Part shown: positions 9,239 through 33,554 of the stretch, piece after piece
Position numbering within the stretch: the first letter of the stretch is position 1
Layout: the number at the start of each line of letters is the position of its first letter
Assembly (NCBI GenBank): GCA_001642005.1
Contig: LWCA01000012.1
Span: 27,159-91,158, forward strand
DNA from: Intoshia linei
Taxonomy: Eukaryota; Animalia; Orthonectida
DNA: 64,000 bases
Reading direction: 5' to 3'
Program-made: the position numbers and the translations under genes
Notes under the pieces: model-generated
The model's input: only the letters and a program-made list of their open reading frames with translations
What the model was told of the DNA's origin: nothing
Databases searched by the model: none

Positions 9239-12200
9239 ATGGTAAAATCAATTGTAAAATTTCAAAAGAATTTAGCAAATGATGATATGTGGAAATCTAT
9301 GTTGATCAATGAAGGCGTAAATGGTATTTTTAAAGAATATCCAATATTTTTAATATAACATTACAAATTAGAAATTGGAAATTTTTCAAAATAAATCAAT
9401 TTTTTTCATATTTTTAATAGGAAAATTATATAAAAGTGTATAACTTGAAAAAATAACCTTGCATTAAGGTGTTCCACGGTATCAAACTAATTAAGTTCAT
9501 ATAGGAATTCAATGATGAAAAAATTTTTCATTTTATCTTTGTTTTGATGTCGGCATATACTTTTCAATATCTTGAAATTATTATTATAGTAAAATAAACA
9601 ACAATAAAAATTAAAACTCAAATGTATTTTTAAAAATTAAATTTGCGCCTTATCTATGGTACATAAAGTTTTTGATTTGATATAATCAAGTTTGAAATGC
9701 GGCCCTAACCTGTATAATATACAGTTTATAAGATACAATAAAGCCAAAATTGTATATCACTACTAATATTAGTATTAATAATATATAACGTAGTCATTGA
9801 TGTATATCAAAAATGGTGTGGAGCATGCAGTGCCTTAAATAATCAATTAATGACAACTATGTTTGATAAAGATATTGAACTCAATTTTTATTCGGTATAT
9901 TAACCAATTGAGGAATATTCTTTATTTTTAAATGAGATTTGTTGTAAAATTTAAAATATATATGTGGAATTGCATTGTATTTATTACACCACATGTCATT
10001 TTTGCACTAATGAATTACAAAAGAAATTAAAAGCCAATAAATTTTAGATTTTTAACTTAAATAATTAACTATAGCACAGGTTTTTGTGATATTCAAATTA
10101 TTTAATATTATCTATCGCACAGGCTTTTGCGATTTTATAATTTATTCATATTATCCATCGCACGTACTCGTGCGTAATAGTTTTGTTTATATTTGGCCCG
10201 CTAATTAATTAAACAAATTAAGTTTGACACTCCGGCTCTAGAAACAACTTCTTATCTTAAAATTAACTTTAGTCAATATTTTTAAACATAATATTAATAT
10301 ACATATGTATCCTATGATTTACTATGTGATTCTATATAAGGAAATTCATAGAGAGGAATGTTTAAGGTCTATTTTTCAGTGCGGTTAATCCGTCTATTGC
10401 AGCGGTTCGCAACATAATTCGCAGTTGGTACCCCTAAACAAAAAAAAATATAATTTGGTACCCCATAATAATTTCTATTTATTGTAACTATGATACCATG
10501 TGAATTAAAAAAAATCAAATAAAATAAATAGTTAGTTAAACTCTACTTTATTAAAAATAGATACATAAATGTATTATGAAATTTTAAAAATATTTATAAT
10601 TTATTAATCATAAGGTGTGAATCATAGGATGAGACGAACTGGCATGCCAAAATAATTTATGGTTCCCCTAGGGGGTACCAGCACCCCAATTTTAGAACCG
10701 CTGCTTTATTGTGTCATTATATGACTAAATCTACTCTTAGTACAATTATTATATGACCCATTAGCAAAATCAGATTTTGAGAAAATAAAATTATTATTTA
10801 AAATTATGTACTATAGGCATGTGTAGAAGATATTGAAGACTTGACAAAATTCAAAGGACACTGCATTCCAACAACATTACTATTTTCGGTTAATTAATAT
10901 ATACTTTTATTATGAACTCTTTTCCGCTTTGGCATTGCATAATATGAAGTGCATATGCAGACCAATAATATAGTATAGCGGTTTCACATCCAATGATTTA
11001 TATACGCATCATTCAAAATTTTCAAAATAATTAAATAGTTTATATCGCCCATTGGGTGTCTTCCAAAATAAAAATACTTAAATCAAACAATTTTTAATAA
11101 TAATTACAATTTAACAACTCTTTAGCTATAAATTTAGTCTTACCAACCCTACTCGAAAAAATCTAGTTTACTAACCCTTTAGGGAAAAATTTGGTTTTAC
11201 TAATCCTCACAGGAAAAATCCAATTTTACCAACTGACATGCGATTCTAAAACACGCTCTGTTTTCATGTTGTGTATTGAATTAGATTGCTTTATACAACT
11301 ATTAAATTCCATTTAGTTTACAAAATATCAGTCGGTATGCTTATCAAGCCTTACTTCCTTGTTAATGTATTCCTGTAACTATATTTAAACTACTTTAACT
11401 AAATAATCCAACCCTTAAGGAAGAAATCCCTTTGTACCAATATTTTTTTAAAAATCCATTTTTACCAAAGTTTTAGAATAAAAACTACTCTATCTGATTC
11501 CAAAATAAAAAATCCAATTTTACCAAACCTTAACGAAAAAAATCGCTTTTATCAAAATTTTTATGAAAAATTCTATTTTACCAAACTTTTAGATCAATAA
11601 TTCCTCTAACTGATTTCATAAGAAAAAACATGATTTTAAAAAAAATTGAAAAATCACCTTTTACTAATATTTTTTTGAAAAAATATTAATCATTAATTTT
11701 TCGGTAAATAATTAATAATAATTGGACAACAGAAAAAAGTTCTATTAAAAACTAGTGGAAGACATAAAAAAAATAAAAATAAATATGTAAATATTAATAA
11801 TTACATAAAAAAAGATATCAGTGACTGCCTTGATTTTGTGAGCCTTCGCTAACATTTGAGAAACTGGGGCAAAGTCAAGAATGTAACTTTTTAATTAAAA
11901 TATTTTAAATAGACCTTGAATAAAATCTCATTTTATCTTTTCAATTTGAAGTAAAATGATATATTTCATTATGATCAGAAGTATTGCCCACGGCCGCACG
12001 TTGTTCACCCCTGGTCTAGACGAAGTAATACAAACTGTATTAGTAAAATTTATTAAAAACATCAAAGTAAGTGTATATTAAATAATTGGAATAAATTAAA
12101 GTTTTTGAATTAAAGAATTAAAAACAACTCGTTTATCGTTATTGGATTCATATACCACGTATGCATAAAATGTAGAGTCAATTCTAATTTCAGTTGGAGT

Positions 12201-15200
12201 AGATTGTGTGCCGTGAATTGATTCAATATCAACATTAAATTCATTAATTGAAGAAGGTGCAGTTTCATCAACTTCAAGTGTTGCCATATGAAATCCTTGA
12301 CATACAAACACATGCTCATTTGATAATAATCCCAAATTGGCATTGATACCAAAAACCTTTTTAATTCCAACATTAATGAGTAAATTTTTAAGGTTCATCT
12401 TGGACGTGACATTAAACTTTGGTAAAAACAAACTGACTGGTCCAACTTTGGCTCCTGTCTCAAAAACCCCAATCCAATCATTATCGCGTAAACATTCAAG
12501 TGGTTGAACTATTAGTAAACTGAGTCCATTTAAAGAATAAGGAATTTCTACAATATTAAACTTTTCATTTTGAAAATGTTTGAATGTTGCGTTGATGTAC
12601 ATTGTGTCAACTTGGGTGACTTCATCCAGCCCCATCGAAGTAAATTTCCGTTTACTAGTAAGATTTTTATCAAATGGTTGTTTAAATGCTGCTTTCATGG
12701 AGATTGCATTAATAATAACCGATCTTACACCTGGTAAAATCGCCCCTTCTGGTACAAGATCATTTATTTCATTGTGAGTAATTTTACTAACAACCTCATT
12801 AATTTTATCTACTTCTTCTTTCTTTGTAAAATCCATTGTCTCGACATTGTCATAATCAATTCCAATATCAAAAAGTGATTTTAAATAGCATGGTTTTATG
12901 TAATACCCAAATGAAATGTAAAATTTGTTGATCATTTCAAATTTGATATCGTTAGATAGCATAATTTCATTTTTCAAGTTTGATAACCATTCAAAAGATT
13001 TACCTATATTGTTAAATTGGAGAAATTCACTGCGAGCCATAGATGGCACACCGTAATATATCATTGATAGAACCATATCCATTGACAATTGTGAAAAACA
13101 TAGATTATCATCGTGACTATTTTCAACCAGTGTTTGCATTATAACACTGTGCACATCTTTTTTTGTCGATCCTGTTTTAAATAATATTGAATTTATACAA
13201 ACCAAAGTTGCAACAAGTATGGATAAAATTTTAAACATTTCTAGTTCTTTTTAGATTAAGATTCAAATAAATGAAATTATCAAATTATTTATTGGTTTAT
13301 ATACACTCGCATTATCACAGTTTGATGATTTTGGGTTTCAAATTCAGAAATGCAATATGCGGATAAATACATTATCTTGATTTTTCCTCATGCTAGATTT
13401 CATATGTAGCATTATAAGATTATATGTTATTGAAATTAAACAATTTTGTAGCCAATTATTAAAAATGTTTAACTTTGACTGAAATGTAGATGGATCAATT
13501 ACGAAAAATGCAGTATAGTGTACCGATTACCAGAATGCATATTTCACAGAGTGTGAACTGATGATATTAGATATATTATTATAATTATGATCTTGTTAAA
13601 TTAATGTACAGTAAACGTTTTGTACAATTTCGTGTCAACCTGTGCAAAGGGTAATTGTACATTTGCCACTGATTTTCAATTCTGCCAATTCACAACCAAT
13701 GTAAAACTACCAATACAAGTTTTTAACCTTTAAAAATTTCATTAAAAGATTATTTTAATAATTGCAAAAAATCCTTTCTGAGTTATGAATACTAAGTTAA
13801 TTCTAACGTATATAATATGCTACGCGATTTTTGTTTGTGTGTGTGTCCTGCTTTATTTAAATAACTACCCGTCTTAGAATTTTATAAAGTCCACATTTCA
13901 ATTACAGTTTCATTACAAATTTTTTCGGGGGTGTTTGCAAACATAATTTTAACATCCCAAACTCCCATCTTACAGGTCAAAAACCCCAATTGTCCAAATT
14001 ACCCTTCTTTTTTAAATGAAAACAGCCCTAGAATTTAAAAAAATTGACAGGTTGTACAGTTGTATCCTGTTAACACACACAGAAAATTTCAATCCGAATA
14101 CTGACGACTTCACGGCCAAAAAAGCATTTTAGTATGCATATTGTTTTTTTCGAAATATTTTATTAAAACAAAAAATGTGAAATAATTATAGGTCCAAAAA
14201 TTAAAAAAAATACTTAACAAAAAATAGCAGTGAACGTCTACACATTTCCAATAAAGAAATATGGGTGAAAATCTATATAATTCATTCTTTCGGAATTTTT
14301 TTTATTGCTACTCAATTTTTAAATTTCAAATTCTTATTTTCAAAACATTTTGAATAAAATTTAAATAGAAACTAAAAAAACTGTTAATATCATTTTTATA
14401 TTTATTACAATCCTTTGTTAAGTCAAATGTTAACAAACAAAAAATTAAGATGAAATAATTGACTGTAAGGTAATGTTATATGATGGTTCCACATGACACA
14501 AATTTGGGAACCACTCTTTTGAAGGATTGATAATAGTGAATAGTAGGATTTTTAAATTATATTTTCAACGTCAATTTATTTTTTAAGTATAATACAAATG
14601 TGCCCTCGGCAGAGCTAGGTCCTGTTTGTACGTAGTACATAACAATTAACCTAGTGTTATATAAGTCTAGCTTGCTTGATTTGTACCCATCTGCGTTAGA
14701 GCATAATTTCTTATTATTTTTTTAACCGATTTGCTATTTACCTATTTGCTTAATGTATTAAAAATTTCGTACACACCAGAATAATAAATTCCATTTTAAT
14801 TTTAAACTTAGGCAGGTTACTTATTTAACACAATATTAGGATGCAATCTACCAAAAATATTATGCTCAATAAATGAATTACTCGGAATTGAAAAAGAGGT
14901 TATTATGGGATTGAAATCAAAAATCGTATATTTAAAAAAAATGTTAATATAAGGTATCTAGAATATCGATATGGATACTGAAACTCTTATGTTTAACAAA
15001 GGTAAATTAATGCGATGAAACGACCATAGTTAAACAGTTTTATCGTCTCTATACATATATATCTTAATACCACTATTTACTGAACAAAATATATATTGTA
15101 ACTTTACTATGATAAATTTAATTTATGACTGTCATAAATTATGACTTACAATGCATTTTCGATATAAATATATTACAGTAATTAAATATATTGATAAATC

Positions 15201-18200
15201 ATTTAAAATTTAAAATTTGTATAAATTGTGTTAATTTATACTCAAAAACTCAACATTACTATAGTTATATTTAATTGTATAATATGACGACATTATATAC
15301 ATCTAATAATCTTGGATAGTCGTACACCAAACATATATATGTTTTAATTGATTTTATATGTTGTATTTATCCCTTGAATACATTTACCTACACAACATAA
15401 TAGATGATGATATGAAATGGGACAATGAAATTATCAAGTTGAATCCAATAAATAAAGGTATAATGTAAAATTAATATACTAATGTTACATTTCATTTATT
15501 AAAAGTAGACTAAAATTTTAATTTAACTGATTAATGATAATAATAAATTAATTTAATATTTCAGAATTCAGTATGGACAGAAGAGGTATACTAATCGACT
15601 ACATTAATATAACTACATTGATTTTCAATATTTATTGCGTATTTTAGTATAGTTAAAGTTAGAATATATTAAATATAATTAATAAATTAATGCATATAAT
15701 GAAGTACATTTGTATAATAATAATGTATCATTTGTAAATAAGTATCCCTTCATTACTCAGTTTAATTAATCCTATATAGATTTTTAGATACCTCACCATC
15801 CATTCCATTATTATAGTATTTTATTTATTTAAACTTATGATCTGTTCATTTTCATAAAATTTTAATCTTGAATGTACTATTTACTTTATTTTAGATAAAA
15901 TTAAGAATCGAGAATTGCGGTATAGTTTAATAAAGCGTTACAGTTTACCATTGGAAGTCATACAAAATATTTCATCAAATAGTTTAAATTATTACAAAAA
16001 TAGTGTCGACATGACTAGCACACCTTCATATAAATCAAATGTATGGGTAGAGACACCTTATGGAGATAAAGCCAATGCAGCAGATGTAAATAATTCAGAA
16101 AATGACGTTGACTCGGCATCTATCCCGATTAAACAACTTTCCTTGTCAAATTCACCAGAGCCAGATTTTATCGGCTGTATTGGAGATAGTTTAAATATTA
16201 ATACTAAAAATTATAGGAGATATGAATCTTCAATTTTAGATAATATTGGTATTTACATTAATTTACTATAAGGGTCAGTTAATATGCTAGGGAAAATTTA
16301 TCTTTTATTGTTACAATTGAATTCAACCTTTCCATCAGAATATTATTAACGTTTATATCTATATCATATACTAGTATTATAGTAGTATTATAGTATTATG
16401 TACGTCGTACAAACAATAATGTTTGATTTAACTGGATATAAATGTATCATCTGTAATTTTTTTAAATTATAGGGGTGTTTATATTTTTAAAAAAAAATAA
16501 TATGTGGTTTTGATTCTGAAATGAAATTTTGTGCGGTTGCTATTTATGATAATGCTTATGATTTTAAAATACATCCCAGAATTTATGTTTAATAAAATTT
16601 TAGGACATGTTTCATTTTTAAAATAAATTGTAATTTGGGGTTTTGACCATGAACGTGTGCGTTTATGAGACTAAGGTTTACGAAAATAGTAATTATTTTA
16701 AAACGGAATTTTAAAAAAATTGCGAAGTCATGAATTATATAGATTTTAACCCATTTCTTTATTGGAAATGTGTAGACGTTCAATGCACATTTTTTTTGAA
16801 ATTGTAAGATCAATATTTACATTTTCAATTTTTATTATAATGGAAATATTTGAAAAATATTGGTTGATAATATATTAAAAATTATTTTTCACTGGGAATG
16901 CGTTGATTTTTTGCAATTGACATTTTGTATTTATGTCAACTGGAATAAGCTCTATCAGAATAATTTTTTTTTTTAATTTCGGACAGTGTATTATTTCACA
17001 TTTTTTGTTTTCATAAAATATTTAGAAAAAAAATATATAAATACTAAAATGCTTTTTTGACCGTGAAGTCGTCACTTATTCAGATTGAAATTTTTTGTGT
17101 GTATTAACAGGATACAACTGTACCACCTGTAAATTTTTTAAATTCTAGGGCTGTTTTCATTAAAAAAAAGGGTAATTTGCGGTTTTGGCCCTGAAGATAT
17201 ATTTTTTAAATTTAAATTTATGATAATCTTTATGATTTTAAAATCCGTATCAGAGTGTTTATTTTTTTAAATTCTCGAACTTTTTTGATTTTTAAAAAAA
17301 AAGGACAATTGGGTTTTGACCCGTATTGTACCGTATTTTTTATCGTACATCGTACCCATATTTCTTTTTTTACATATTTTTCATGATTTATTTATTCTTG
17401 ATTACAATTCTAGCATTAGTTATGCACTTATTCCAGTATTGTTTCTTATTTCATTTTATTAATAAATTAAAACTGTTAGTTTAATAATGATTTGAGTAAA
17501 GATATTTTTTTGTGCGGCCGCGTTATATTTTTTTGTCACATTCGGCTTGCCATGCAAATTAAGTCTAACACCCCCAAATATAATATTTGATAGATTCACT
17601 ACTTTTTTAAAAAAATCTTGCCTTTTAAAATATAAAGAGTGCTCTTTCTGCAGGATCATTTACAGATACATGTAGAGCTCGTCTAACCGCATTAACATTT
17701 TATTTAAGATAATCTTGGTGTAGAATAAACTATTTCATTGGAAATTCTACTACATGTATGAGATGCATTTTTAAATTCATTTTTTTCTATATAATCCTAC
17801 TTTTTAATTATTTTGGGTCATACACAATGTGTATTGCATGGAATTATGTTTTCATTAATTATCATAATTTGAAGCATTTACGAGATATATAACAACCATT
17901 ATTTGTAAATACCGAAAATTAACGAAATGTTGAAAAGAACTTCATTATACCGAAAAAATTAATGTATCAGTATATTTGAAAAAATTTTGTGTTCATTGAA
18001 CACTTAGCATGTTTACTTATCTTGAGAGTAATGTGTAATACACATTTTGTATGTTAATTAATAAATATTTAATTTATCTGTACTACTTAGGAGAAGAATC
18101 AGAAGGTAAATCAAAATCAGGTATTCATTAATACTCATTTTAAGTGTTATTATTATTAAAAAAGGACAATTTTTATTCATTATTTTGCACTTTATTACAA

Positions 18201-19337
18201 AATTTTCATTTTCCAAATAAATCATTATCTACATTTCAGAATTTAATATCTTTTGAATGGTTTAAACTTTAAAGCCAACGAACTTTTAATTGATAAAAAA
18301 TGACTAATTCCGTGTAGAAACAATTGAAAACCGTGTAGATTTGGATTAATTTCAAATTAGGCATATGAGCGATTTCTACTGTAATGTATAGATTGTACTC
18401 AAATTTAGATACCAACAGATTTAGTCAAGACGGTATATACATTTCATCTGAAAATGGTGATTTAATTTCATGATCCTTACTAATATAAATAGAATATTTG
18501 TTTGTCTGTGTTCCAATTTATTTGAAAATCTGACAATCCCACAAATTTAAAAATCACAAATTACGTGTCAGTTTTCAAAATATTTTCTTCTATTTTAATA
18601 AAAGTGCACAAACTAATGTATATTTAGAACTATCCGGTGAATTTGACCTGACCAAAAATGAGAATGAAAAAAGCATTCAAAAAGATTTAACTATTTTGAA
18701 TGCACCACGAAATATCCCTGAATCTGAGTCAGAAAAGTCGTCTTTTAATCAATCCAAAATATTAATTGAAGTAACTAATGAATTGGAAAAGGATCACAAA
18801 TCAGGAAACTCAAATAATTCAGATAACGATAAAAAAAAATCTGACATTGAAAAATCCGATTTATCTGTCACTATTAATCAGTCCAACTCTTCAAATCCAT
18901 ATACTATTCAAGATGAAATTCATTTAAGTGTAGCGGAAGAAAGTGACATTATTGTAGAAACACGACATGGAGATGGTGACAAAACTGATAGACTATCAAA
19001 TGAAAATACGAATCCTACAGACGATTATACCACATCAATTAAAATATCTGAAAATATTATTGTAACGGATGTATCTTCGCAAGATCAACAGATTTCTGAA
19101 TCTACAAAAAGTTTGTCAATACCAATCGAATCTGGTGACTCGAGAGAAAACAGTATCATAGAAAGTTTTAAAAAAGATACTACAAATAATGATTCAACTA
19201 AACTTTCCATCTCGTCTGACAAAGTAACGAACACAGTTACAAAAGCAGTGGAAAGCAATAATGACCAAGAGAATGCTTCAAAAATTTCAAATCCTTCTGA
19301 TGTTAATTACAATAGTCGAACAAGTAGTAATGTGTAG
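9239..19337 (+). CDS. Thioredoxin-domain protein of NME8/NME9 type (WCGAC) with a low-complexity Ser/Asn/acidic tail and no NDK domain; 11 predicted exons
   Basis: Phase-consistent GT-AG exons 9239-9323, 9794-9894, 10817-10888, 14812-14925, 14962-15001, 15404-15457, 15565-15585, 15895-16248, 18091-18120, 18409-18432, 18628-19337. Translation: MVKSIVKFQKNLANDDMWKSMLINEGVN|VIDVYQKWCGACSALNNQL..FYS|ACVEDIEDLTKFKGHCIPTTLLFS|AGYLFNTILGCNLPKILCSINELLGIEKEVIMG.. It aligns exon by exon with the Trx domain of the gene at 21139. The tail micro-exons are less certain. Confidence 0.8.
10400..10703. mobile_element. hAT-type MITE (copy 1 of 2)
   Basis: TIR CAGCGGTTC../..GAACCGCTG, GGTACCCC subterminal repeats, degenerate 8-bp flanks GTCTATTG/CTTTATTG. 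A near-identical copy lies at 26036-26334. Confidence 0.8.
11135..11680. repeat. Degenerate tandem array of about 30-bp units (AAAAATCCAATTTTACCAA core)
   Basis: The core motif recurs more than 10 times here and again at about 35960-36260. Confidence 0.6.
12096..13238 (-). CDS. Serpin, 380 aa, single exon, signal peptide, probably non-inhibitory; nested in intron 3 of the Trx gene
   Basis: Hydrophobic N-terminus MFKILSILVATLVCINS. Serpin motifs NLCFSQLS(M..LSMIYYG), INEVVSKITHNEINDL, VIINAISMKAAFKQPF..T..RKF, VDTM, IVEIPY..LSLLIVQP, LFLPKF, FGINANLGLLS, H.ATLEVDE. Confidence 0.93.
   Translation of the reverse strand: MFKILSILVATLVCINSILFKTGSTKKDVHSVIMQTLVENSHDDNLCFSQLSMDMVLSMIYYGVPSMARSEFLQFNNIGKSFEWLSNLKNEIMLSNDIKFEMINKFYISFGYYIKPCYLKSLFDIGIDYDNVETMDFTKKEEVDKINEVVSKITHNEINDLVPEGAILPGVRSVIINAISMKAAFKQPFDKNLTSKRKFTSMGLDEVTQVDTMYINATFKHFQNEKFNIVEIPYSLNGLSLLIVQPLECLRDNDWIGVFETGAKVGPVSLFLPKFNVTSKMNLKNLLINVGIKKVFGINANLGLLSNEHVFVCQGFHMATLEVDETAPSSINEFNVDIESIHGTQSTPTEIRIDSTFYAYVVYESNNDKRVVFNSLIQKL
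13296..13303 (-). promoter_or_regulatory. Candidate TATA box of the serpin
   Basis: TATATAAA on the minus strand about 58 nt upstream of the serpin ATG; a minus-strand AATAAA lies at 12049-12054 after the stop. Weak evidence in an AT-rich background. Confidence 0.3.
13801..14654 (+). mobile_element. Helitron-like non-autonomous element (most complete copy)
   Basis: The 5' end matches the family consensus A|TCCTTACTTATATAATATGC (degenerate here) plus a TG microsatellite. The 3' end GCCCTCGGCAGAGCTAGGTCCTGTTTGTACGTAGTACATAACAATTAACCTAG|T has a hairpin and CTAG terminus. Inserted between A and T with no TSD. Confidence 0.7.
16460..17330 (-). mobile_element. Helitron-like repeat, internal fragments
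   Basis: Reverse-complement similarity to 13801-14654 and 27160-27910 (e.g. TTTTTGACCGTGAAGTCGTCACTTATTCAGATTGAAATTTT). Confidence 0.6.
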
Positions 19338-19554
19338 GAATATATTGTCTTCATTTTGAACATTTTTCATGTGTAAAATCTTTACAATTTAGTATGCATG
19401 TAAATTTTTGTTTTTAGTATGTCTAATACATTTTGTTCGTTAATTGTTAATTTTATAAATAGTGAACAAGCATGTTTTAAGTATGTTTCAACTAAGATAA
19501 TATCTTTAGTTTATTTGACATTATTATTGTCGAATGAATTCTACATTTAAAATT

Positions 19555-20019: not shown

Positions 20020-20069
20020 GATTTAATTGAATTTTCTTATAATTAATATTTCCATTAATTATTAATTAA

Positions 20070-21138: not shown

Positions 21139-24100
21139 ATGTCTAAACGTAAAGATGCCGTCGTATTTCAGACAACTATAGAAAACACTGAGCAGTGGAA
21201 AAAAACTATTCACAGTCCGGGTCTTCACGGTATATTTAATGATTTAAATTATAAAATAGATTAGTATAGAATTAAAGTTGTATTATAGCTTTTATTTCGT
21301 ACCATTACTTATACGTTCATAAAATTAATGTAGTAATTGATGTGTATCAAAAATGGTGTGGGCCAGTATCAGCTCTGGTTCAAATATTTCGAAAATTATG
21401 CAATGAAATTGGAAACGAATTACTAAAATTCCATGTGGTAGGTTTCTATTAATATTTAGCGGTTACACAATACGGTGATGTAGGGTAGTTTCGTCTTACA
21501 TTTGAAATGATACGAAAGAGAATATTAAAAAATGACGAGTAACAATTTAGATTCTATATTATATAACAGTTACCACCAAACTACGGCACGCTGACCAAAT
21601 CCGGTCCGCGAATTACAAATCTATTACAAAATACACCAGTGTTATCTTACAAATTATCATATATCATCGACTTAGATTTTAAATATATACTACCGACTTG
21701 TCATTTCTATACCATGAGAAACTTGTTGATTTATTAAATTTTAAATCATAATTTAAAATACCGTGATGTATTTTTCTATCTAACCGCGGATTTTTTTTTA
21801 GTTGTTCCGGCTCCATGTTATACAACATTCAATAAAAATTTAAATAAAGCTTTGGATACAAGATCCGATGACTTGTTGAATAAAACAGATTAATTTTATA
21901 GCACATGAATTTTAATTAAAATTAAAAATATATATTAACACTAATTTAAAGCATATCTTTATTAATTTTGCTTTAAAATAATGAATAAGCCTTAACCCTA
22001 GAATACCCTAAAACTAGATTTTAAAAACCTAAATTTGACCATTTGACCTAAATTTGGTGGTTAAAATCACCACTGATAATAGTTCTCGTTATATTTTGAT
22101 AGTTCAAAGGGTTAAACCTCTTGTGTAGTTATTAATGACATTTGAAACTAAAGCAGAACATACGGTGTGATATCTCGTCACGTATATCCTCCGAATAATT
22201 CAATCGTATGATAAATTTAACTATGCACCAAAGAACAAAAACTCAATAATATTATCTTAGATGGGAACATATTTTTAACACAAATGTAATCGTAGTAAGT
22301 AACTACGGTCTCATTACTGATATTTGATAGATAAATGTGAAAACAGCTGATAGTTATGATGATACTATTTTCAAGTTGACGGATATCATGGAATTTTTTA
22401 TGAAATCTATTTGTTTCATACGTTACTTATTTCTTTTAGGCCTGTGCTGATACCATAGAAGTTCTTGAACCCTACAGAGGAAAAAGCAAACCAGTCACAA
22501 TGTTTTTTGCGGTAAAATCATTTATTATCACGTAAATAGCTAAAAATGGATTAATTGTATGTCTGTTTGATTGTAACCATTTATTTAGAAAATAAACAGT
22601 TTCAAAACTTTAAATAACACAATTTCTAGTACAGTTTTTCAAATCCAATACATTTTCATTGTCTGATATAGCCATCTTCATCCCCAAACCCACAAATTAC
22701 CGATTATTTCAAATATAAAACTAGTCCATTAAATTAGATCCAATAAAAAATATTGATAATTAAGATGCTATCATTAAAAAAAAATATATAGTCTGATATA
22801 CTTAATTCGAGTTGATATAAACTAAAAATATTCACATCAGAAATCTCATACTTCTGGTCAAAACGCTTTTTAATATATTATCAATCTATATATTTTAAAT
22901 TTTTGAACAATAAAAATTTAAATATTTATGATAAAGTAAAAAAAATGAGTTTCAATCTCAAAGATTGATTTTTCAATTAAAATCACCTATAACTTTGTCA
23001 TTATCAATTTGAAATTGATGAGATTTTGGAATATTTAGTTAATTTGCATTTTCAGTTAATAAAATTATAAAATGTCTGCTAATTAAATTCATTTCGCAAA
23101 TTATGGAAGAAATTTTAAATTTAAATTGATACTAAAAATGAAACACCCAGGTTACAATATCTACAATGAATATTTTGAAAATTTTTGAAATTGCATTTAT
23201 TGAATTTTATTATTTGTTTTAAATTCAAATTTTAATTTAATTGTTTAACTTTTTGGCTCTTTAAGAAAAATGATTAAAACATTGTAGCTTTGTTACCTAG
23301 TAACAATACTATTCCTAGTGTACTTTGGTAGTGCTGTGTATTCCAATACCATATAAGATATTTACTTCACAATATTGACTGCTTAATAGTAGCAATGTTT
23401 AGTGTACACTGTACAGTACACTTTAGGTGTTAACTTTTCACAAAAAAAAAATACAGGGTCATACATAATGAAAAATGTAAGTATATTTATGATTGCTGTT
23501 TTTAAAGTATAATTTCCAAAAAGTCAGGCCCACGTCGACAAAATAGTTTTCTAAAATATATATAATATATTTTACGTAACCTTGTCATTTAGTTTATTTT
23601 CATTATACAGGCTAATTCCTCGTTAACGGAAAAAAATTCCTGATTAACGGATGGTGAATTTTTCTCAAGTACAAGAATTCCGTTAAATTATAATTTAAAA
23701 TTATATCATCATAATTTTTAAAAACATCAGAGTACTCGACGGAAACAGTTTTCATAAATCTCCAGTTATTATTAATTCAACTTATATATTGTTAACGGTA
23801 TTATGTGCTTATAAAATATAATATATACATAAAATGTGGATTATTAATAATTAAACCGAAAAATGAATACTTTGATTCTGATTAATATTAATTACATTAA
23901 ACTATGTAATCCTATTTACCTTAATCCTGTTAGTTAGACATCAATCAGACACCGATTATTCTTGTTTCATTATTATTAATTCAACATAAACAATTCATTT
24001 AATTTGATTTTGTATAATGATATTTTGCGCATTGTGACTATTGATTATACGGATATTTTAATGTTTAATGTTTCTAATACTATAACTAAAAGCCAGAAAA

Positions 24101-27100
24101 AGCGTTCCGGTAATATAAAGATAAAGGCTAAGAGATGTTCTGATTTTTCTCGATTGGAGAAAAGCCTTGAAAAACTAATACGAGTTCCAAACATTAAATC
24201 CATTATTGGAAGATACCTTGCGGTGATATGACCTCGTTGTTATAGAATGCTCCATATCAAGAATGGTATGGGACATTGTACATCTCACATTGAAAACTTA
24301 CAAGCTCCTCATCCTTCAAAAAATGTGCTGGTACCTAAAAATTTCGATTTTCGGACGGTCACTGACAGTTATTTTGAAAGTGACGTCTTCGTGGATGAGT
24401 CATATGATGAGCCAATTATTAAAAAGGTGACAGGAGTTTCATCTTGTATTTTGCCACAAAGGTGTAATTGTTGCTTATGCTTTTTGAAAAGACACGCTTA
24501 TACTTTAATTCCTTCTTTAAATGTAGCCATGACAAATGAGATCGCCGATTCATCGAGTCCAAGTGTTACGAAATAAAGCGTCACTTGAGTACATTGACGA
24601 TGAGTTAGTTACAAATACCATAGATATAATTAATAAACATTAGCTCAAATTGCAAAAGGGTATTATTTAAATGTAAAAGTGGGCCTGTGTTTTTGTCATT
24701 ATATGTGAAACAAAAATTATGGTGTTAATTTAGAAGGCATTTCTCATGTCATACGGGGGTGTATTTTATTAATTTTTAAAATTCGATAAAAAAGTTAACA
24801 CTCTACGTGTACACTGTACAGTTCTTATCATTATATGTATATTATGGGATTCACAGCCAGTCCTTTTGGCCAAAAATCTTCCTAACATTACAAACATACA
24901 CAAAATATGTCATATCTGTCTGCATAACAACCTTAATGTTGTGTAATATAAAATTGAGATCATTGATTGGTTCCGACTTTATTTGCTCTATATTTGATTT
25001 ACACCGCATATACAGTGCAAGAGGGCCAAAGAGTTAATTGTATTTGTGGCTAGTAAAATGTAAAAAGTATATACCTTGAAGCGTATGCCATCGGCAAAGC
25101 TATCTACTAGTTATACAAAGTACATAACAGACAAGCTAGTTAAATTTAACATAAAACGATGAATATATTCAAAAGCTAAATTTTAGATAAGTATAATTGT
25201 TATAATTATAATTTAATGATATAGAGTGGCGTATTAGTAGGAATAATACGTGGCTGTGACTGTCCAATTTTAATTAAGACTGTAAAAGAAAAACTAAGCG
25301 ACGAAATGCGAGTTATGGACGGAGTATTTGATAGAATCGCAGTAATAATAAAAAAATTTAAACTATTTAAAAAAATACTCATTTGAATTTAATGGTCAGT
25401 AACTTACAAATAATGTGAATATATATTTTCGGTTTTATGGTTCAAAAAATCCTCATAAATAATATAAATCGGGTGAAAATAATATGACCTTCCCTATTAA
25501 TCACTAATTTTTAATGTATAATCCATAACATAAGATATTTTTTCAAAATTAAAATTTTAACCTCCCTAACTTTTAATAACTTGTAAAACAGGCTGCGCCA
25601 ATCAACTACTAATATAAATCTAATGTTTGCATTGCTGATATAATATTATATATATTTAGGTTAAAGACCCTGAAGTTGATATATCATTCAGTGATATGGG
25701 TATATTCAATTCACTTTTAATTAAATTGTCAACTTTAGATAACACAATATGCACTGACGGAGAAATTATCATCTTAGATCCGATTTCTAATCTATTATTG
25801 ACAGGTTTAATTAAAATTTAATTAATATAACAGTATATGGCGTTATGTACCTTGTAATGTGTTATGAATGAATGTGCCCACGCTACAATTGTGATCAGGG
25901 ATTGGAACCGATTATTTTAATCATCACAGCAATTTCTGTTGCATTTAAGTTTTCTGGGTATAAGTAATAAATACAAGTACAGTATTCTTTTTCTAATATG
26001 CTTTTTGTTTGGCGTCTCAACTTGGGACTTATGAACAGCGGTTCTCAACATACTTCACAGTTGGTACCCTTAAACTAAAAAAAATATAATTTGGTACCCC
26101 ATATTAATTTCTATTTATATTAACTATGATACTATGTGAATTAAAAAAAATCAAATAAAATAAATAGTTAAATTCTACTTCATCAAAAAGAAATACATAA
26201 ATGTATTATGAAATTTTAAAAATATTTATAATTTATGAATCATAAAGTGTGAGTCATAGGATGAGACGAACTGGTACCCCAAAATAATTTATGGTACCCT
26301 TAGGGAGTACCAGTACCCCATTTGAGAACCGCTGCTTTAGAAATATTAGAGAATATTAGAATATGAACAGTGTGCATATGCGAATTGATTAAAATGTAAA
26401 AATTTTTTTACATGGTACATAGAAGTGTCATATTGTAAAATGATGGGCAAGGCAAATTAATGGGAGAATACTGTATTACAATGATTACGTTTATTCCATT
26501 TACTCATTTCATGTTAGTCACATGTCTAAACTATTATATTTTAAACATTCTACAGAGTGTAGTCGTAACGTATTTATGCTATATTAATTAAAATTTAAGA
26601 TATATCGGATGATCCATCATCAAATGTACCTACAATAGCAATTTTGAAACCTGATGTTGTAAAGCAAGGAAAAGTTGATGAAATTTTGAATAAAGTAATT
26701 TTCTATCAATAATATAATATTTATTTTTAAATTATATTAATGGATTTAGATAATTGAAAAAAATTTTGAAATAGCTGATAGAGTAGATAAAACGTTAACC
26801 GAGGAAGAGGCACGTGAATTATATAAGAATAAATCTGAAATGGTAAATATTTAATTCAACAGTGTTTCCCAATCAGTAACTATAATCAGTATTTTCTTCA
26901 GCACGTTTAGCAATATTTAGTACACTGTAAATGTATTCATAATTAAAGTATCATATAGTGTAGCAGCTCTCTGTAGCTCACATATTATTGTATTTTAACA
27001 ATTCAAAATTTATTAGTAAATTTATTAACAACGTATTAAGAACCTACTAAATATGTTGTACCTGTGAATAGTGGTTGCTCTGGCCCGAATTGGGTATAAA

Positions 27101-30100
27101 ATAAAATATCTAATTAAACGGCATTGACTAACACAATTAATACTAACCTAACTTTTATACAATCCTACGCAATTTTTGTTTGTGTATGTGTGTCACGCTT
27201 TATTTAAATAACTACCAGTCTTTGAATTTTTTTAAAGACAGCATTTCAATTACAGTTTTTTTCGGGACGTATAATAAGATAAATTTCAACCTCCCAATTT
27301 CACATCTTAGGGTCAAAAACCCCAGTTGTTCCTCTTTTTGAAAATCAAACGAGTTGGAGAATTTAAAAAAATATATAAGTTGATGCGCATTTTAAAATCA
27401 TAAACATTATCATAAATTTAAATATAAAAAAAATTATATCTTCATGGCCAAAACCCCAAATTACCCTTCTTTTTTTAATGAAAACAGTTAGAATTTAAAA
27501 AATACAGGTGGTACAGTTGTATCCTATCAAGACAAACAAAAAATTTCAATCTGAATAAGTTACGCCTTCACGGTCAAAAAAACATTTTAGTATGCATATT
27601 TTTTTTTCTGAAATATTTTATTAAAATAAAAAATCTGAAATAATTAACGGTCCGAAAATTAAAAAAAAAAATTATTCTGATAGAGCTTATTCCAGTTGAC
27701 ATAAATACAAAATATCAATTGCAAAAAATCAACGCATTCCCAGTGAAAAATAATTTTTAATATATTATCAACCAATATTTTTCAAATATTTCGAATAAAT
27801 TGAAAATGTAAATATTGATCCTACAATTTCAAAAAAAATGTGCATTTTACGTCTATACATTTCCAATAAAGAAATATGGGTGAAAATCTATATAATTTAT
27901 TCCTTCGGAATTATTTGGATGATTTTCTCACGAATGCAGTTTTTCACGTTAAACTGAAAGTTAGCGTTGTTTATTTAAGTTTCGATGATGCCAATAAAAA
28001 CGATTGAGAGAGTTGAGAGTTAAGAGAAATGGTTGTTTGATTTTGAAACGGAAAACACTGATTATCATATTCACCGAAACGCTTTATTTCATAATTATCT
28101 ATTCAATCAATTATAAAATAATTTTCAATTTCTCAAATATTATTTATAGCCAGAGTTTGAAAAATTAATAGAATTTATGACCAGTGGACCCATTGTAGCA
28201 CTATTAATATGTCGCAAAGACAATGAAAACGCTATAGAAGAATGGAGAAAGATTTTAGGTCCTACTATAATAGAGGACGCTAAAATAGAACAACCTGATT
28301 CGTATATTTTTTTTTAATTTTTCATATCTTTCTAGACTACGCGCTCAGTACGGAACTGAAAACATTATGAATGCATTGCATGGAAGTTCCAGTATTAACG
28401 ATGCTAGATCGTAATAAATATATAACTAAAAATATCACATTTATGCATTAGTTATTAAGTGTGTCCATACGTCTAACGCACCGGTTCCCAACGTACTTCC
28501 ATTTGGCACCTACAGTGTAGGTAGTGATAGGTCCTAACTCCAACAAAAGTTTCTTACGCTGTCATATTTTATATTTAATGTAACTATGTCATCATATTTA
28601 TTAAAAAATTAAAATAAATATATGATTTTTAACCTTTACTTCACCAAAAAATAATGTATAAGACCTCTCGGCATCTCAGTACCCTCATGTGTAAAGCATT
28701 GGTATGAGGGTCCATGAAAACCCTGGCAAGAATCATTACATTAATTTTACATTTATTTCTTAAAATAATGATATTATCATATCAATACGATAATGTATAC
28801 TTTAATAGAGAGCTCGGTTTCTTTTTTCCTAAATATATTGAGAAGGCTAAAGAATTACAGAAAATGCCAGATCGAACAATTGCAATTATTCGACCTACAG
28901 CATTTAAAACATTTAAAGATGAAATATTAAAATCGATTGAAGAATCAGGGTTTACTATAGCTATTCAGAAAACAATGCTACTAACACAAGATCAACTAGA
29001 TATGCTTTATGGTCATGTAAAGGAAAAACCAGAGATTTATGACGAACTCCAAAAGGAAATGCTTAGGTAAATTGATATATTTATAGATTCTACTGTAGAC
29101 TGTGTAGAGCAGGGTCGGCAACCTTTTGCATCTCGTGGACCACGTTTTTAATAATTTACATATGATACATTTCAATTTTAATTAAAGTGAAACGGTTTCA
29201 GTATATTCAATAAAATAAAATTCGGCGATATTTGAAAATTCAGTATTAAAATGATTATAATGAGCCAATTGTAGTAGAAAATGGGTCACCAAAATTATTA
29301 AATAAATTATTCTGTGGGCAACTGTTTGCCGACTCCTAGTGTAGAGTAACTATTAGGGGTGTTTCATAATTTTATATGTTACGTTCAATGTAAGGAAAAT
29401 AAGGACTTATTCATAAATGGTCATATAAAAAAAATATATATCTTCACTTCCAAAACCACAAATGACTCTTCTTTTTTTTTTTAAAAAATGAAAAAGTGTT
29501 AGAATTTAATAAAAACACAACTACATCCAGTCAAAATCAATAAATTAAATATTTCTTAATTTCTGGGACTGCCATTTTTTAAATAAATGGTTACCACATT
29601 TTTAACAATTCTTACTTTATACATCATGTATATGCAAGGATTTTGCCAAATCGGGTATAAATTTAGTTTAGTTCATATTAGTTAATATTATTAAAATTAA
29701 TAAAATAATATAATTAGTGGAGAATCATTAGTGTTGGGACTAGCAAAAAAGGACGCAATACAAAATTGGCGTAATTTGATTGGGCCAATGGATTCCGAAT
29801 TTTGCCAAGAAAACACTGAGACAACAGATAAAAAATTACGAGAAACATTTGCAATAGAGAACAGTAAAATTAATCCCCTCCATGGAGCAGATTCTTGTGA
29901 AACGGCAGAAAAAGAATACAACATGTTTTTCAAAGAAGAAAAAACTATAGCTTTAATTAAACCTGGTCACAAAGAAGATGATGGTATACTATAATTTATA
30001 ATCATTATCAGTCGGGTCAAAGGGCTATTTCTCGATTTTTGTATATTTTTTTTTACTCACTTGAGCAATCCTAGATCACTATGTATTACTTATATCACGG

Positions 30101-33100
30101 TGGGAATGTGCAGCCTTAGTGACGATTAGGTGCAGCTTTCATTTGAAAATATGCCATATTCTCTATTTTTTAAATTAATTTACATTTTCAATTTGGCAGT
30201 TTAAAATATCAATTTAATTATTTTATATTTCAATTTTAGCCTATCATACTTTTCATATTTAAGTAAAAATATAAGTGAAAGCATCAATTTAATTTTATAT
30301 TCTAAGACGCTTATTGCATGTGGCCTTATGTTTGAAATTGGTTCCCAACCACAAATTACATAATAAAATTTCGGATCTCATTTGATAATTCACTATTTTG
30401 GAAGAAAGATTGAAAGATTTAGATTTCAAAAAAAAAAGTTAAAATCAATTTATATTACATTTTGATTGATTTTATAATTATGTATGTCAAGCACGAGTCA
30501 TAAATATTTATTTTACCAATTTATATTTTTATATCATTTTTACAAATAGGCGTACAGTGGTAATTCGATCGTAAATACAGCTAATTGCATAATAAATTTC
30601 TACAATAATTCTAATAACCAAGGCCTAATTTAATTAGCATCAATATGTTCTTTACTTGAATTAACCGTTATATATATATATATTATTAATAACAATCAAA
30701 ATTCGTTTAAAAATCGTTTTTCAATTCAATTGTTATTGTTATAATACAAAAATAATTACCTAATATGGCAGCATTTTAAATTGTCTAGAAAATCTTCAAT
30801 TTTTGGTGGCCCTAGTCTCTACCCATTTATATCTCTAAACCTATCAGCCTGTACTTTACGGTGGTGGCGGCATGAAGCGTCAAAAAAGATGAATAATATG
30901 ATCATTGATAATTTTTTTAATATTTTATTTTTTTTGTGAACGATAGTTGGAACGCCGAAATAAACTAGAAGGGAGTATAATATAATGCATTATAATGTTT
31001 GATTTAGAAATTATAAATGAAATTAAAAATTCTGGTTTCTCTATTTTGTCTTCCGAAAAGAAAGAAATTTCATTGTCGATTGCAGAAACAATATATGAAA
31101 ATTGTAAGGACAGGGATTATTATGAAGATTTGCTTTCTTATATGACCAAGTAAATTATTTTTGACATAAAGTTAACTGTAAAAATATAAATCGGTCACAT
31201 TGAGATTAAAAAATACTTTTTGTTTACGGTGTTGTTGATTAAAATGAATTTTTTTGATATGATAGGATGAAATATATAAAAATTATTACACTGTGCAATA
31301 GGGTGTTAACTTTTACAATTTCTAAAAAAAGCATATTTCAATTTTTTAGTCTAGGTTTTTTACTGTAATTTTATGCTAAACAAAATGATAAAAAAATTTA
31401 TTACTATATATTTATAAATATTAATATTGATTATTAGATTTTTTTTTAAATTATTTCCAACTACACGTAATTTAAAATGCAATTAATAAAATTAAAATGA
31501 CTAGATTTTATTATATGCTTTAGCGGTAAAACATTGGTCATGTTATTATCTAAAAATAATGCTGTAAACGATTGGAGGGAAAAGATGGGTAATGTCGATC
31601 CTAAAATTGCAAAAACTGAAAATGTTGATAGTATCCGAGCAAAATATGGCGATGATGTTTTAAAAAATGGTATTTTATGAAGCAAAATATTTAAAATATA
31701 CATCATAACTTGTGATCTACTAGTGTTGATGATTATCTACAACAGGGATGCCCAATCTGTCGATCTCAAATGATTTTCTAGTAGATCGCCAAAATTAGAA
31801 AATTAGAATTATTTTTTTATTTTAATAATATTCGTTATTAAAATGATATCTATTTTCATATTCATATATATAATTTATTTTTAATATTGTTAAAATTTGT
31901 ACACATTTCAATAAATGCGATGTAACTTGTTTAAATCGTTGTTATATATAAATTAGTCCACTATTTCTTAAATTATGTTTTGACGATAATTTTTAAATAT
32001 ACAGCGAAAGTGCTTGGAATTATTTCGAATTTTAATTTTTATGCTTTCTACAATCACACTAAAAATATTTAGTTGAACGTTTTATATTGGATTACGCTAG
32101 GCGATTTTTTTGAAATAGGTTCCGATCAGAAACATTTTTCAAGTCAATGTATTAGTCGATCGCCACTAATTGAAAAATTTTAATTTTTGCATCAAAAAAA
32201 GGTTGGGCACCCCTCATCTATAATGAGTAAATGACGTTTCCTAAACATTTTTTTGAAATGTGTAATTATTAACAGCAGTAAATAAATTTTTTTACAGTCC
32301 TTTAATGGGTTTTTCAGTCGACATAGTTTTGACCCATGTAAAAATATTTTGTTATGACTCATGACATTGCATAGAAAAAAGTAACAACCAAAATCCACCG
32401 TTACTTAGTTACTACGGTGTATATGTTTTAAAATACAGTTAGCGTGTAAAATTCAAACCGTATCGTTGAGGCCCGATAATTAGATAATTTAAATACTAAT
32501 ACACAATTATAATGATGTCAAATATAGTGGTTCACGGAAGCAGTAACCTCGACAGAGCAAAAAAAGAATTGAAATTACTACTGGGAAACACGAGTGAATT
32601 TTTAGAAAAATTTGAAAAAGACTCGTGTAATAAAATTTAATTTTATAAATCAATTAATTACTCAATATAGCCGCTCAAACTGAGGAAAAAGTAAACAACG
32701 AAGAAAACCGGGATATGGAAGATGAAAAAGTTCAAGGTGATAAAAAATCGACTGATGGTGTTGAACCTGAAGAAACCATCGAAAATTTTGAAAATGAATT
32801 AAAAACAGAAACCGATCCAGAAAAAGTAGATGATACCGATGTTGAAAACCCGGATCAAACCAATATAGACAAGGATACACAGGAAAATACAGCAGATCAA
32901 GAAGTTTTAACCAAAGACGAACAAATCGATGATACTACAGTAGAAAATACAGACGTCAAAACTGTAAACGATACGGATATTATTCAAGAAACTAAAAAAG
33001 AGCAAGACAAAAAAAATGAAGCTGATATGATTGAAGAAACAACTCCAGAAAAACAAGATGATAATGAACCTGCTATTGTTGAAAATGAAATGTCTGAAAA

Positions 33101-33554
33101 AAAGCAAGAAACTGATATCGATAAAGAAAATGAAATTACCGAGCCTGTTGAAAATAAGGACGGTACGAATTTAGAATTGGAAACAAAATCTAGTTTAAAC
33201 CAAGAAAATGTTGAAAAGGTGGAATCGAAATCACAAGACGCAAATTCTGGTACCAAAGACGTTAAAGAAGAATCAATAAAAGATCAAACTAATAATGATA
33301 ACGAATCTTTGAAAAGTGAAAAACGTTCAGTCAAATCAATAAAATCCAATAAATCTTTGAAATCAAATAAATCTGTGAAATCTACAAAGTCGAATAAAAG
33401 CAAGACATCGATGAAATCGAATAGCTCAATTAAAGAAAGAATCAAACCTGATAAATCGAGCCAAGGTAGTGTTAAAAATGTTCAAGATGAAAAGTCTGAA
33501 TCGATAAAATCCAAAAAATCAAATGTCAGCAAGAAAAAATCAAAAAAGACGTAA
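21139..33554 (+). CDS. NME8: NME8/TXNDC3-like protein: thioredoxin domain + three NDP-kinase domains + charged tail (outer-arm dynein IC1 type); 16 predicted exons
   Basis: Exons 21139-21229, 21334-21437, 22440-22511, 25225-25341, 25660-25699, 25739-25804, 26600-26694, 26750-26842, 28150-28301, 28336-28410, 28809-29066, 29718-29983, 31008-31149, 31524-31669, 32528-32626, 32671-33554. Trx: MSKRKDAVVFQTTIENTEQW..VIDVYQKWCGPV. NDK1: TIAILKPD..FMTSGP..LRAQYG..NALHGSS. NDK2: RTIAIIRP..WRNLIGP..NPLHGADS. NDK3: KTIALIKP..IRAKYG..NVVHGSS. Confidence 0.92.
25980..26473. mobile_element. Old Tigger-type MITE containing a nested hAT MITE
   Basis: Degenerate TIRs TA|CAGTATTCT..TAATATGC and GCAAATTAATGGGAGAATACTG|TA. 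Confidence 0.5.
26036..26334. mobile_element. hAT-type MITE (copy 2 of 2)
   Basis: TIR CAGCGGTTCTCAA / TTGAGAACCGCTG, flanks CTTATGAA/CTTTAGAA; collinear with 10400-10703. Confidence 0.82.
27160..27910 (+). mobile_element. Helitron-like repeat copy
   Basis: Collinear with 13820-14300 (CTACGCAATTTTTGTTTGTGTATGTG..AATAACTACCAGTC..ATTTCCAATAAAGAAATATGGGTGAAAATCTATATAATT). Confidence 0.65.
29110..29338. mobile_element. hAT-type MITE with perfect 8-bp TSD
   Basis: CAGGGTCGGCAA / TTGCCGACTCCTA termini flanked by GTGTAGAG at 29102-29109 and 29339-29346. Confidence 0.8.
31743..32215. mobile_element. hAT-type MITE
   Basis: CAGGGATGCCCAA / TTGGGCACCCCTC termini, TSD ATCTACAA/ATCTATAA, GTCGATC subterminal motifs. 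Confidence 0.75.

What the first reader, a model, noticed from the sequence alone, without database searches (positions are those of the whole stretch)
9239..33554. Tandem NME8-type paralogues that appear to have split redox and NDK functions
Seen: two same-strand neighbouring genes, neither visible as a unit in the ORF track, share the same first six exons. Phases match, exon 3 is 72 nt and exon 5 is 40 nt in both, and both contain VIDVYQKWCG. The first keeps a dithiol (WCGAC) but has no recognisable NDK domain, only a disordered Ser/Asn/acidic tail. The second has three NDK domains but its Trx motif is WCGPV. Known: NME8/NME9 and sea-urchin dynein IC1 normally combine WCGPC and NDK domains in one chain. 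Inference: a local duplication partitioned an axonemal Trx-NDK protein into a redox-active subunit and an NDK scaffold, a possibly undescribed two-gene ciliary module.
Basis: partly seen in the sequence, partly recalled or inferred. Interest (0 to 1): 0.8.

Follow-up and report, generated by a model that had tools for sequence, protein, structure and literature searches.

The report
Tandem NME8-type thioredoxin gene pair
Two neighbouring genes in a tiny AT-rich invertebrate genome are old copies of the ciliary thioredoxin/nucleoside-diphosphate-kinase gene NME8: one keeps all three kinase domains, the other only the thioredoxin head plus a featureless tail. This is a lineage-specific twist on patterns already known in this family, not a new kind of module.

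Summary
Two same-strand genes (9239-19337 and 21139-33554) share paralogous exons 1-6 with identical phases. Exon 3 is 72 nt and exon 5 is 40 nt in both, and both contain VIDVYQKWCG. Gene 2 is the NME8/TXNDC3 orthologue, with a Trx domain, three NDK domains and an acidic tail, and its motif is WCGPV. Gene 1 has a full-length NME8-type Trx domain with WCGAC (94.9 bits against a family HMM). A sensitive family HMM found no NDK in it. It continues into single-copy long ORFs that give a Ser/Asn/acidic tail of about 390 aa.

The two Trx domains are sister in a tree (85/81). They share a derived Phe-to-Thr change and a derived exon 5/6 layout. Gene 1 is therefore a lineage-specific derivative, not an ancient separate Trx family.

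The claim of a functional split into an undescribed module is not supported:
- 21 of 37 sampled NME8-type proteins lack the canonical CxxC.
- NDK-less NME8 derivatives are published for insects and Trichoplax.
- Eutherian NME9 is a published partial NME8 duplicate.
- Chlamydomonas outer-arm dynein carries two Trx-only light chains.

Transcription and splicing remain untested. An in-frame splice from gene 1 into gene 2 cannot be excluded. My verdict is a new variant of a known kind, of modest interest.

The parts
9239..9323 (+). Gene 1 exon 1 (ATG, 85 nt, ends in phase 1); N-terminal helix of the NME8-type Trx domain
   Evidence: tblastn hits from NME8 homologues
9794..9894 (+). Gene 1 exon 2 (101 nt) with VIDVYQKWCGAC
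   Evidence: best PDB match is Chlamydomonas outer-arm LC3 (E 0.0012)
10817..10888 (+). Gene 1 exon 3 (72 nt); keeps the cis-Pro (IPT)
12096..13238 (-). Intronless serpin gene nested antisense in gene 1 intron 3; not part of the pair
   Evidence: PF00079, E 1.6e-46
14812..14925 (+). Gene 1 exon 4 (114 nt), the last part of the Trx fold; followed by a 36-nt intron that holds in-frame stops
14962..15001 (+). Gene 1 exon 5 (40 nt, ends in phase 1), linker
   Evidence: matched to gene 2 by length, phase and position only
15404..15457 (+). Gene 1 exon 6 (54 nt, phase 1-1), homologous to gene 2 exon 6
   Evidence: best of 549 segments
15565..15585 (+). Candidate 21-nt symmetric micro-exon, optional for the frame. 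In another frame it overlaps a weak NDK-like relic at 15560-15604.
   Evidence: E = 1, not significant
15895..16248 (+). Gene 1 exon 8 (354 nt, phase 1-1); single copy in the genome, no Pfam family
18628..19337 (+). Gene 1 terminal exon. It lies in a 267-codon open frame with no Met, so it needs upstream exons. Ser/Asn/Asp/Glu-rich, single copy.
21139..22511 (+). Gene 2 exons 1-3 (21139-21229, 21334-21437, 22440-22511): Trx domain with WCGPV. These exons are absent from the database model P0001.
24061..24564 (+). Dispersed-repeat ORFs inside gene 2 intron 3, used by the database model P0001 as its first 155 residues
   Evidence: at least 58 copies in the genome
25225..25804 (+). Gene 2 exons 4-6 (25225-25341, 25660-25699, 25739-25804): end of the Trx domain plus linker
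26600..32626 (+). Gene 2 exons 7-15 encoding three NDK domains
32671..33554 (+). Gene 2 terminal exon, Lys/Glu/Ser-rich tail and stop

Best explanation
Gene 2 is this genome's orthologue of NME8/TXNDC3, the Trx-NDK subunit family linked to outer dynein arms. It has an N-terminal thioredoxin domain, three NDK domains and an acidic tail. Gene 1 arose from it by a local duplication that took in at least exons 1-6 (the Trx domain plus linker). That duplication happened in the lineage leading to this animal. Gene 1 then lost or never received the NDK exons, evolved fast, and now encodes an intact NME8-type Trx domain with a CGAC dithiol. This domain is joined to about 390 residues of low-complexity, probably disordered sequence.

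Shown here: the paralogy, the domain content, and the intactness of frames and splice sites.

Inferred: both products bind outer-arm dynein heavy-chain tails through the Trx domain, as LC3, LC5 and TXNDC6 do. Gene 1 would then act as an LC3-like, possibly redox-sensitive light chain. Gene 2 would keep the kinase-bearing role.
For: - Exon chains, phases and splice sites.
- P0001 is 100% identical to gene 2 from exon 4 onward.
- NDK domains occur only in gene 2, by Pfam and by a family HMM built from 304 domain sequences run with filters off. Every gene 2 NDK exon from 26623 on scored E 1e-4 to 1e-20. The best match in gene 1 had E = 1.
- tblastn with 18 homologues finds only Trx exons 1-4 in gene 1.
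- Against the NME8-type Trx HMM, gene 1 scores 94.9 bits over positions 6-121 and gene 2 scores 143.7 bits.
- Gene 1 keeps 17 of 21 family-conserved positions and gene 2 keeps 18.
- The two Trx domains are sister at 85/81 support.
- Both have Thr at a position that is Phe in 97% of the family.
- The 40-nt exon 5 plus an extra exon 6 is shared by the pair. It is absent from Octopus, Schistosoma japonicum and Symsagittifera.
- These are the only two copies of this Trx type in the genome.
- Exon 8 and the tail of gene 1 are single copy. The 267-codon frame exceeds every one of 300 simulated maxima.
- Introns of 34-55 nt are real in gene 2, so the 36-nt intron in gene 1 is plausible.
- Exon 2 of both genes best matches the axonemal Trx proteins LC3 and TXNDC6 in the PDB.
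Against: - No transcript evidence was available. The window's own genome is withheld from the contig look-up.
- No database protein containing the gene 1 tail or its Trx domain was recovered.
- Gene 1 has a very long branch, 1.78 against 0.69, so the sister grouping could partly be long-branch attraction. It is no more similar to gene 2 (35%) than to other animals' NME8 (up to 36%).
- Exon 5 has no sequence similarity between the copies.
- The tails are not homologous beyond composition (z = 0.7). Whether the whole gene or only its 5' part was duplicated is therefore open.
- Association with dynein is inferred from family membership alone.
Confidence: 0.7

Rival explanations
1. The locus is one transcription unit with two alternative 5' Trx modules. 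Transcripts that start at gene 1 skip its tail exons and gene 2 exons 1-6, and join gene 2 exon 7. This yields either a WCGAC-Trx or a WCGPV-Trx in front of the same three NDK domains.
For: The gene 1 donors after exons 1, 5, 6, 7 and 8 all end in phase 1. The acceptors of gene 2 exons 2, 6 and 7 are all phase 1. Such joins would therefore be in frame.
Against: Gene 1 has its own long, single-copy ORF exons without start codons, ending in a stop. These make sense only as its own 3' end. The join would need an intron of about 11 kb, whereas the introns modelled here are 34-3923 nt. Gene 2 has its own ATG exon.
Confidence: 0.1
2. Gene 1 is a decaying or silent duplicate, that is, a pseudogene in the making. 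Its apparent exon chain is residual.
For: Its branch is 2.6 times longer than that of gene 2. The NDK exons are gone. No database protein matches it. A weak NDK-like relic at 15560-15604 suggests degeneration.
Against: All nine exons keep open frames and AG/GT sites. Gene 1 keeps 17 of 21 family-conserved residues, including CxxC and the cis-Pro, and scores 94.9 bits full length. Exon GC exceeds intron GC, 0.304 against 0.253. At 35% identity the duplication is old, so an unconstrained copy would have accumulated stops in 25% GC DNA.
Confidence: 0.1
3. Gene 1 is a short Trx-only gene of about 132 aa that ends at the stop inside the 36-nt 'intron 4'. Exons 8-9 belong to a different transcript.
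For: Retaining the 36-nt intron gives an in-frame stop right after the Trx fold. Trx-only axonemal light chains of this size exist, such as LC3 and LC5 (PMC10886578). Exon 8 contains an internal Met.
Against: Exon 6 is homologous to gene 2 exon 6 and in the correct phase. The terminal exon has no Met and needs a phase-1 donor, which exons 5-8 provide. Introns of 34-44 nt are genuine in gene 2.
Confidence: 0.08
4. Gene 1 belongs to an ancient separate thioredoxin family and merely sits next to NME8.
For: Its identity to gene 2 is no higher than to other animals' NME8. The intron positions in the Trx domain are ancestral to the family (PMC2978717).
Against: It matches the NME8-type Trx HMM full length, including the family-specific N-terminal extension. 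It is sister to gene 2. The two share a Phe-to-Thr change. They also share a linker exon structure beyond the Trx domain.
Confidence: 0.02

Closest known systems
NME8 / TXNDC3 (sea-urchin outer-arm IC1 type; named 'thioredoxin domain-containing protein 3 homolog / 6-like' in Lineus, Octopus, Babylonia and Schistosoma)
   Same: Gene 2 has the same architecture: an N-terminal Trx domain, three NDK domains and an acidic tail. Its Trx domain is up to 47% identical to homologues. The intron positions in the Trx region and the 72-nt and 117-nt exons match Octopus.
   Different: The motif is WCGPV, so the otherwise 95%-conserved second cysteine is lost. There is an extra 66-nt linker exon and a shortened 40-nt exon 5.
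NME9 / TXNDC6 (human outer-arm light chain, LC3 homologue)
   Same: It is a truncated paralogue made by incomplete duplication of NME8, and it shares the 5' exon structure (PMC2777172). It binds an outer-arm heavy-chain tail (PMC10886578). It is the best PDB match for gene 2 exon 2.
   Different: NME9 keeps one NDK domain and lies on another chromosome. Gene 1 keeps none, is in tandem, and carries a long low-complexity tail.
'TRX-Nme8' of insects and Trichoplax (Desvignes et al. 2010, PMC2978717)
   Same: These are highly divergent NME8-related proteins that have lost all three NDK domains.
   Different: The paper lists them as the only NME8-related gene of those species. Here the NDK-less copy sits beside a full-length one.
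Chlamydomonas outer-arm light chains LC3 and LC5; Tetrahymena LC3BL
   Same: They are Trx-only dynein subunits with a vicinal dithiol, and two different Trx subunits occur in one dynein. LC3 is the best PDB match for gene 1 exon 2.
   Different: They are about 110-160 aa with no long tail. Binding of gene 1 to dynein is untested.

Membership tests
NME8/TXNDC3 (gene 2) | N-terminal TRX_NDPK-type thioredoxin domain | tested here: met
   143.7 bits, full length, against an HMM of 37 NME8-type Trx domains (joined model scored in a local script). Pfam PF00085 is weak on single exons.
NME8/TXNDC3 (gene 2) | Three tandem NDK domains | tested here: met
   PF00334 hits on exons from 26599 to 31677. The family HMM covers three domains.
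NME8/TXNDC3 (gene 2) | CxxC (WCGPC) active site | tested here: not met
   The motif is WCGPV. Only 16 of 37 homologues sampled have WCGPC, so this feature does not define the family in practice.
NME8/TXNDC3 (gene 1) | N-terminal TRX_NDPK-type thioredoxin domain | tested here: met
   94.9 bits over HMM positions 6-121. It keeps 17 of 21 conserved positions.
NME8/TXNDC3 (gene 1) | NDK domains | tested here: not met
   No PF00334 match at E <= 10. The family HMM with filters off gave a best E of 1. tblastn with 18 homologues found none.
Outer-arm dynein thioredoxin light chains (LC3/LC5/TXNDC6) | Thioredoxin fold with vicinal dithiol | tested here: met
   Gene 1 has WCGAC and the cis-Pro is retained. 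The best PDB hit is 8glv_DC, LC3.
Outer-arm dynein thioredoxin light chains (LC3/LC5/TXNDC6) | Physical association with an outer-arm heavy-chain tail | not testable with these tools
   This needs axoneme proteomics or structure.
Outer-arm dynein thioredoxin light chains (LC3/LC5/TXNDC6) | Disulfide-reductase activity | not testable with these tools
   This needs an insulin-reduction assay. Published assays on mammalian NME8 and NME9 were negative (PMC2777172).

The most novel reading that the evidence does not exclude
The pair is a true complementary-degeneration case inside one dynein subunit. After duplication, the dithiol was kept only in a new Trx-plus-disordered-tail subunit, and the kinase array only in the other. 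Both are needed in the same outer arm. That would make redox sensing and nucleotide handling separable by genetics.
Probability: 0.12. Interest if true: 0.5.

Novelty: new variant of a known kind. Interest (0 to 1): 0.3.

Why it matters
The locus adds a third independent route by which the NME8 family sheds its kinase domains, after insects/Trichoplax and eutherian NME9. Here both the full-length and the stripped copy sit side by side, which gives a natural comparison of what the Trx head does alone.

It also corrects a database gene model. The 5' end of P0001 is built from a transposable-element ORF, and the real Trx exons are missing from it.

That identification rests on size alone.

Tried and rejected
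- The word search with the gene 1 tail found no relatives among proteins of 147-467 aa. This says nothing about longer proteins.
- The word search with the Trx region of P0034 returned only Trx+NDK proteins from vertebrates, hemichordates and a sponge. It found no NDK-less relative and no model of gene 1.
- The contig look-up for the nested serpin was blank because the window's own genome is withheld there.
- Two look-ups gave no genome context. P0011 is carried only by transcriptome contigs, and P0016 is not on record.
- Homology between the two tails was rejected. The apparent 24% identity is compositional (z = 0.7; nothing better than E 3 with composition correction).
- A hidden NDK in gene 1 was rejected apart from one non-significant relic.
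- DNA-level similarity between the two loci is limited to exon 2 and shared interspersed repeats, so this is not a recent duplication or an assembly artefact.
- Joined spliced models were not sent to any database or structure tool. Exons were searched singly by reference. The joined models were used only inside local scripts built from window coordinates, and short exon peptides (13 to 35 residues) were typed into one local script.
- No structure prediction of the joined Trx domains was made.
Full report
**What is there.** The window is about 25% GC throughout. It lies in a 41,603,068-base assembly of 3,520 contigs. That size equals the 41.6 Mbp quoted for the orthonectid Intoshia linei (PMC9218549). 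This is a lead from size alone.

The peptide VIDVYQKWCG is encoded twice on the + strand, at 9793 and 21333, with none expected by chance. Translated comparison of the two regions found paralogous pieces for exons 1, 2 and 3. It also found several interspersed-repeat fragments shared by the introns. At DNA level only exon 2 (71%) and those repeats align, so the copies are old and are not an assembly artefact.

**Gene models.** I rebuilt both exon chains by script, requiring AG/GT boundaries and an open frame.

| Gene | Exons | Length | Exon coordinates |
|---|---|---|---|
| Gene 1 | 9 | 516 aa | 9239-9323, 9794-9894, 10817-10888, 14812-14925, 14962-15001, 15404-15457, 15565-15585, 15895-16248, 18628-19337 |
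| Gene 2 | 16 | 899 aa | 21139-21229, 21334-21437, 22440-22511, 25225-25341, 25660-25699, 25739-25804, 26600-26694, 26750-26842, 28150-28301, 28336-28410, 28809-29066, 29718-29983, 31008-31149, 31524-31669, 32528-32626, 32671-33554 |

- Phases are the same for exons 1-6.
- The 965-aa database protein P0001, found with one NDK exon as query, is 100% identical to the window from gene 2 exon 4 to the stop.
- The first 155 residues of P0001 come from ORFs at 24061-24564 inside intron 3. That ORF belongs to a dispersed repeat with at least 58 copies in this genome, many of them broken.
- The same model confirms introns of 34, 39, 44 and 55 nt, one of them inside an NDK domain. This makes the 36-nt intron 4 of gene 1 credible.

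**Domains.**
- Pfam NDK matches fall only on gene 2 exons. A six-frame scan of the whole genome at E <= 10 gives no NDK match in gene 1.
- I built a family-specific HMM from 301 NDK domains of the retrieved homologues plus the three of gene 2, and ran it with filters off. Every gene 2 NDK exon from 26623 on scored E 1e-4 to 1e-20.
- In gene 1 the best match had E = 1. It is a QYG...N.LH stretch at 15560-15604 that overlaps the 21-nt exon in another frame. It may be a relic, but it is not significant.
- tblastn with 18 homologues finds only Trx exons 1-4 in gene 1.
- An HMM of 37 NME8-type Trx domains, built without the two window genes, scores gene 2 at 143.7 bits. It scores gene 1 at 94.9 bits over nearly its full length.
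- Gene 1 keeps 17 and gene 2 keeps 18 of the 21 positions conserved in at least 80% of the family. These include the cis-proline.
- Exon 2 of each gene best matches axonemal thioredoxins in the PDB: Chlamydomonas outer-arm LC3 and human TXNDC6.
- By my own reading against human NME1, NDK domain 1 of gene 2 keeps all nine catalytic-site residues. Domain 2 lacks three (Lys12, Thr94, Ser120) and domain 3 lacks one (Thr94). 'Scaffold' may therefore understate it.

**The rest of gene 1.**
- Exon 8 and the terminal exon have no Pfam family. Both are single copy in the genome.
- They lie in open frames of 137 and 267 codons. In 300 first-order simulations of this region the longest frame averaged 89 codons and never exceeded 141.
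- The 267-codon frame has no methionine, so it must be spliced to upstream exons. Its acceptor at 18628 needs a phase-1 donor, which exons 5-8 all provide.
- Exons 6, 7 and 8 are each symmetric (phase 1-1), so any of them could be skipped.
- The tail is rich in Ser, Asn, Asp, Glu and Lys. It is not homologous to the gene 2 tail beyond composition.
- The word search found no relative of it among proteins of 147-467 aa.

**Relationship of the two genes.**
- The two Trx domains are 35% identical. Gene 2 is up to 47% identical to other animals' NME8, and gene 1 at most 36%.
- In a maximum-likelihood tree of 39 Trx domains they are sister with 85/81 support. The gene 1 branch is 1.78 against 0.69 for gene 2, so long-branch attraction is a caveat.
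- Both have Thr where 97% of the family has Phe.
- Both have a 40-nt exon 5 followed by an extra short exon 6. The gene 2 exon 6 peptide finds its best match in the whole 12-kb gene 1 region exactly at gene 1 exon 6.
- Octopus bimaculoides, Schistosoma japonicum and Symsagittifera roscoffensis lack that exon 5/6 layout. Octopus does share the 72-nt exon 3 and the 117-nt exon 4. Published work also reports that the Trx-region gene structure is conserved across metazoans (PMC2978717). Those features are therefore ancestral and say nothing about timing, whereas the exon 5/6 layout is derived and shared.
- No other copy of this Trx type exists in the genome.
- The Schistosoma and Symsagittifera loci have no Trx neighbour within 10 kb.
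- Gene 1 is thus a lineage-specific derivative of an NME8-type gene, not an ancient separate family.

**Comparison with what is known.** The retrieved homologues are named 'thioredoxin domain-containing protein 3 homolog' or '6-like' in Lineus, Octopus, Babylonia, Schistosoma and Symsagittifera.

- Among 37 of them only 16 have WCGPC. Seven have WAGPC, five have WSGPC, and others vary further. Loss of an active-site cysteine is routine here, although loss of the second cysteine, as in gene 2, is rare.
- Desvignes et al. report that insect and Trichoplax Nme8-related proteins have lost all three NDK domains (PMC2978717).
- The same group reports that eutherian NME9 arose by incomplete duplication of NME8 with the same 5' exon structure. 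They also note that no thioredoxin activity was detected for NME8 or NME9 (PMC2777172).
- A review of dynein subunits describes LC3, LC3BL and TXNDC6 as homologous thioredoxin light chains on outer-arm heavy-chain tails. It adds that Chlamydomonas has a second one, LC5 (PMC10886578).
What is particular here is the tandem coexistence, the reciprocal pattern (dithiol only in the NDK-less copy), and the long tail.

**What remains open.**
- No transcript data could be reached.
- Several gene 1 donors and the gene 2 acceptors at exons 2, 6 and 7 all use phase 1. A read-through transcript joining gene 1 Trx exons to gene 2 NDK exons would therefore be in frame.
- Retention of the 36-nt intron would give a 132-aa Trx-only product.
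- The joined models were analysed only in local scripts built from window coordinates. They were not sent to database or structure tools, where exons were searched one by one by reference.

**Verdict.** The evolutionary reading (local duplication of an NME8-type gene, with one copy stripped of NDK) is well supported. The functional partition and the claim of novelty are not. It is a new variant of a known kind, with an interest score of 0.3.

Noticed in passing
window 24061-24564 (+): The database protein P0001 for gene 2 starts in ORFs of a dispersed repeat with at least 58 genomic copies, many with stops. It omits the three real Trx exons, so this is a probable annotation error.
   Followed up: yes
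window 12096-13238 (-): An intronless 380-aa serpin (PF00079, E 1.6e-46) is nested antisense in intron 3 of gene 1. Intron 3 of gene 2 also hosts foreign ORFs.
   Followed up: partly
window 10400-10708 ~ 26036-26339; 13994-14216 ~ 27456-27674; 16714-17322 ~ 27916-27310 (inverted): Interspersed repeat fragments 86-90% identical are shared by introns of both genes. They are unrelated to the gene duplication.
   Followed up: partly
window 20070-20366 (+): A 99-codon open frame lies in the spacer between the two genes, with a Cys-x-Cys ... Cys-Lys pattern reminiscent of SWIM-type transposase zinc fingers. It has no Pfam match.
   Followed up: partly
window 15560-15604 (+): A QYG-5 residues-N-x-LH stretch resembles the NDK active-site exon of gene 2 (28336-28410) and follows an acceptor at a similar relative position. 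At E = 1 it may be a relic of a lost NDK exon or chance.
   Followed up: partly
window 28302-28335, 25700-25738, 32627-32670, 14926-14961: Very short introns of 34-44 nt coexist with introns of 1-4 kb in the same genes.
   Followed up: no
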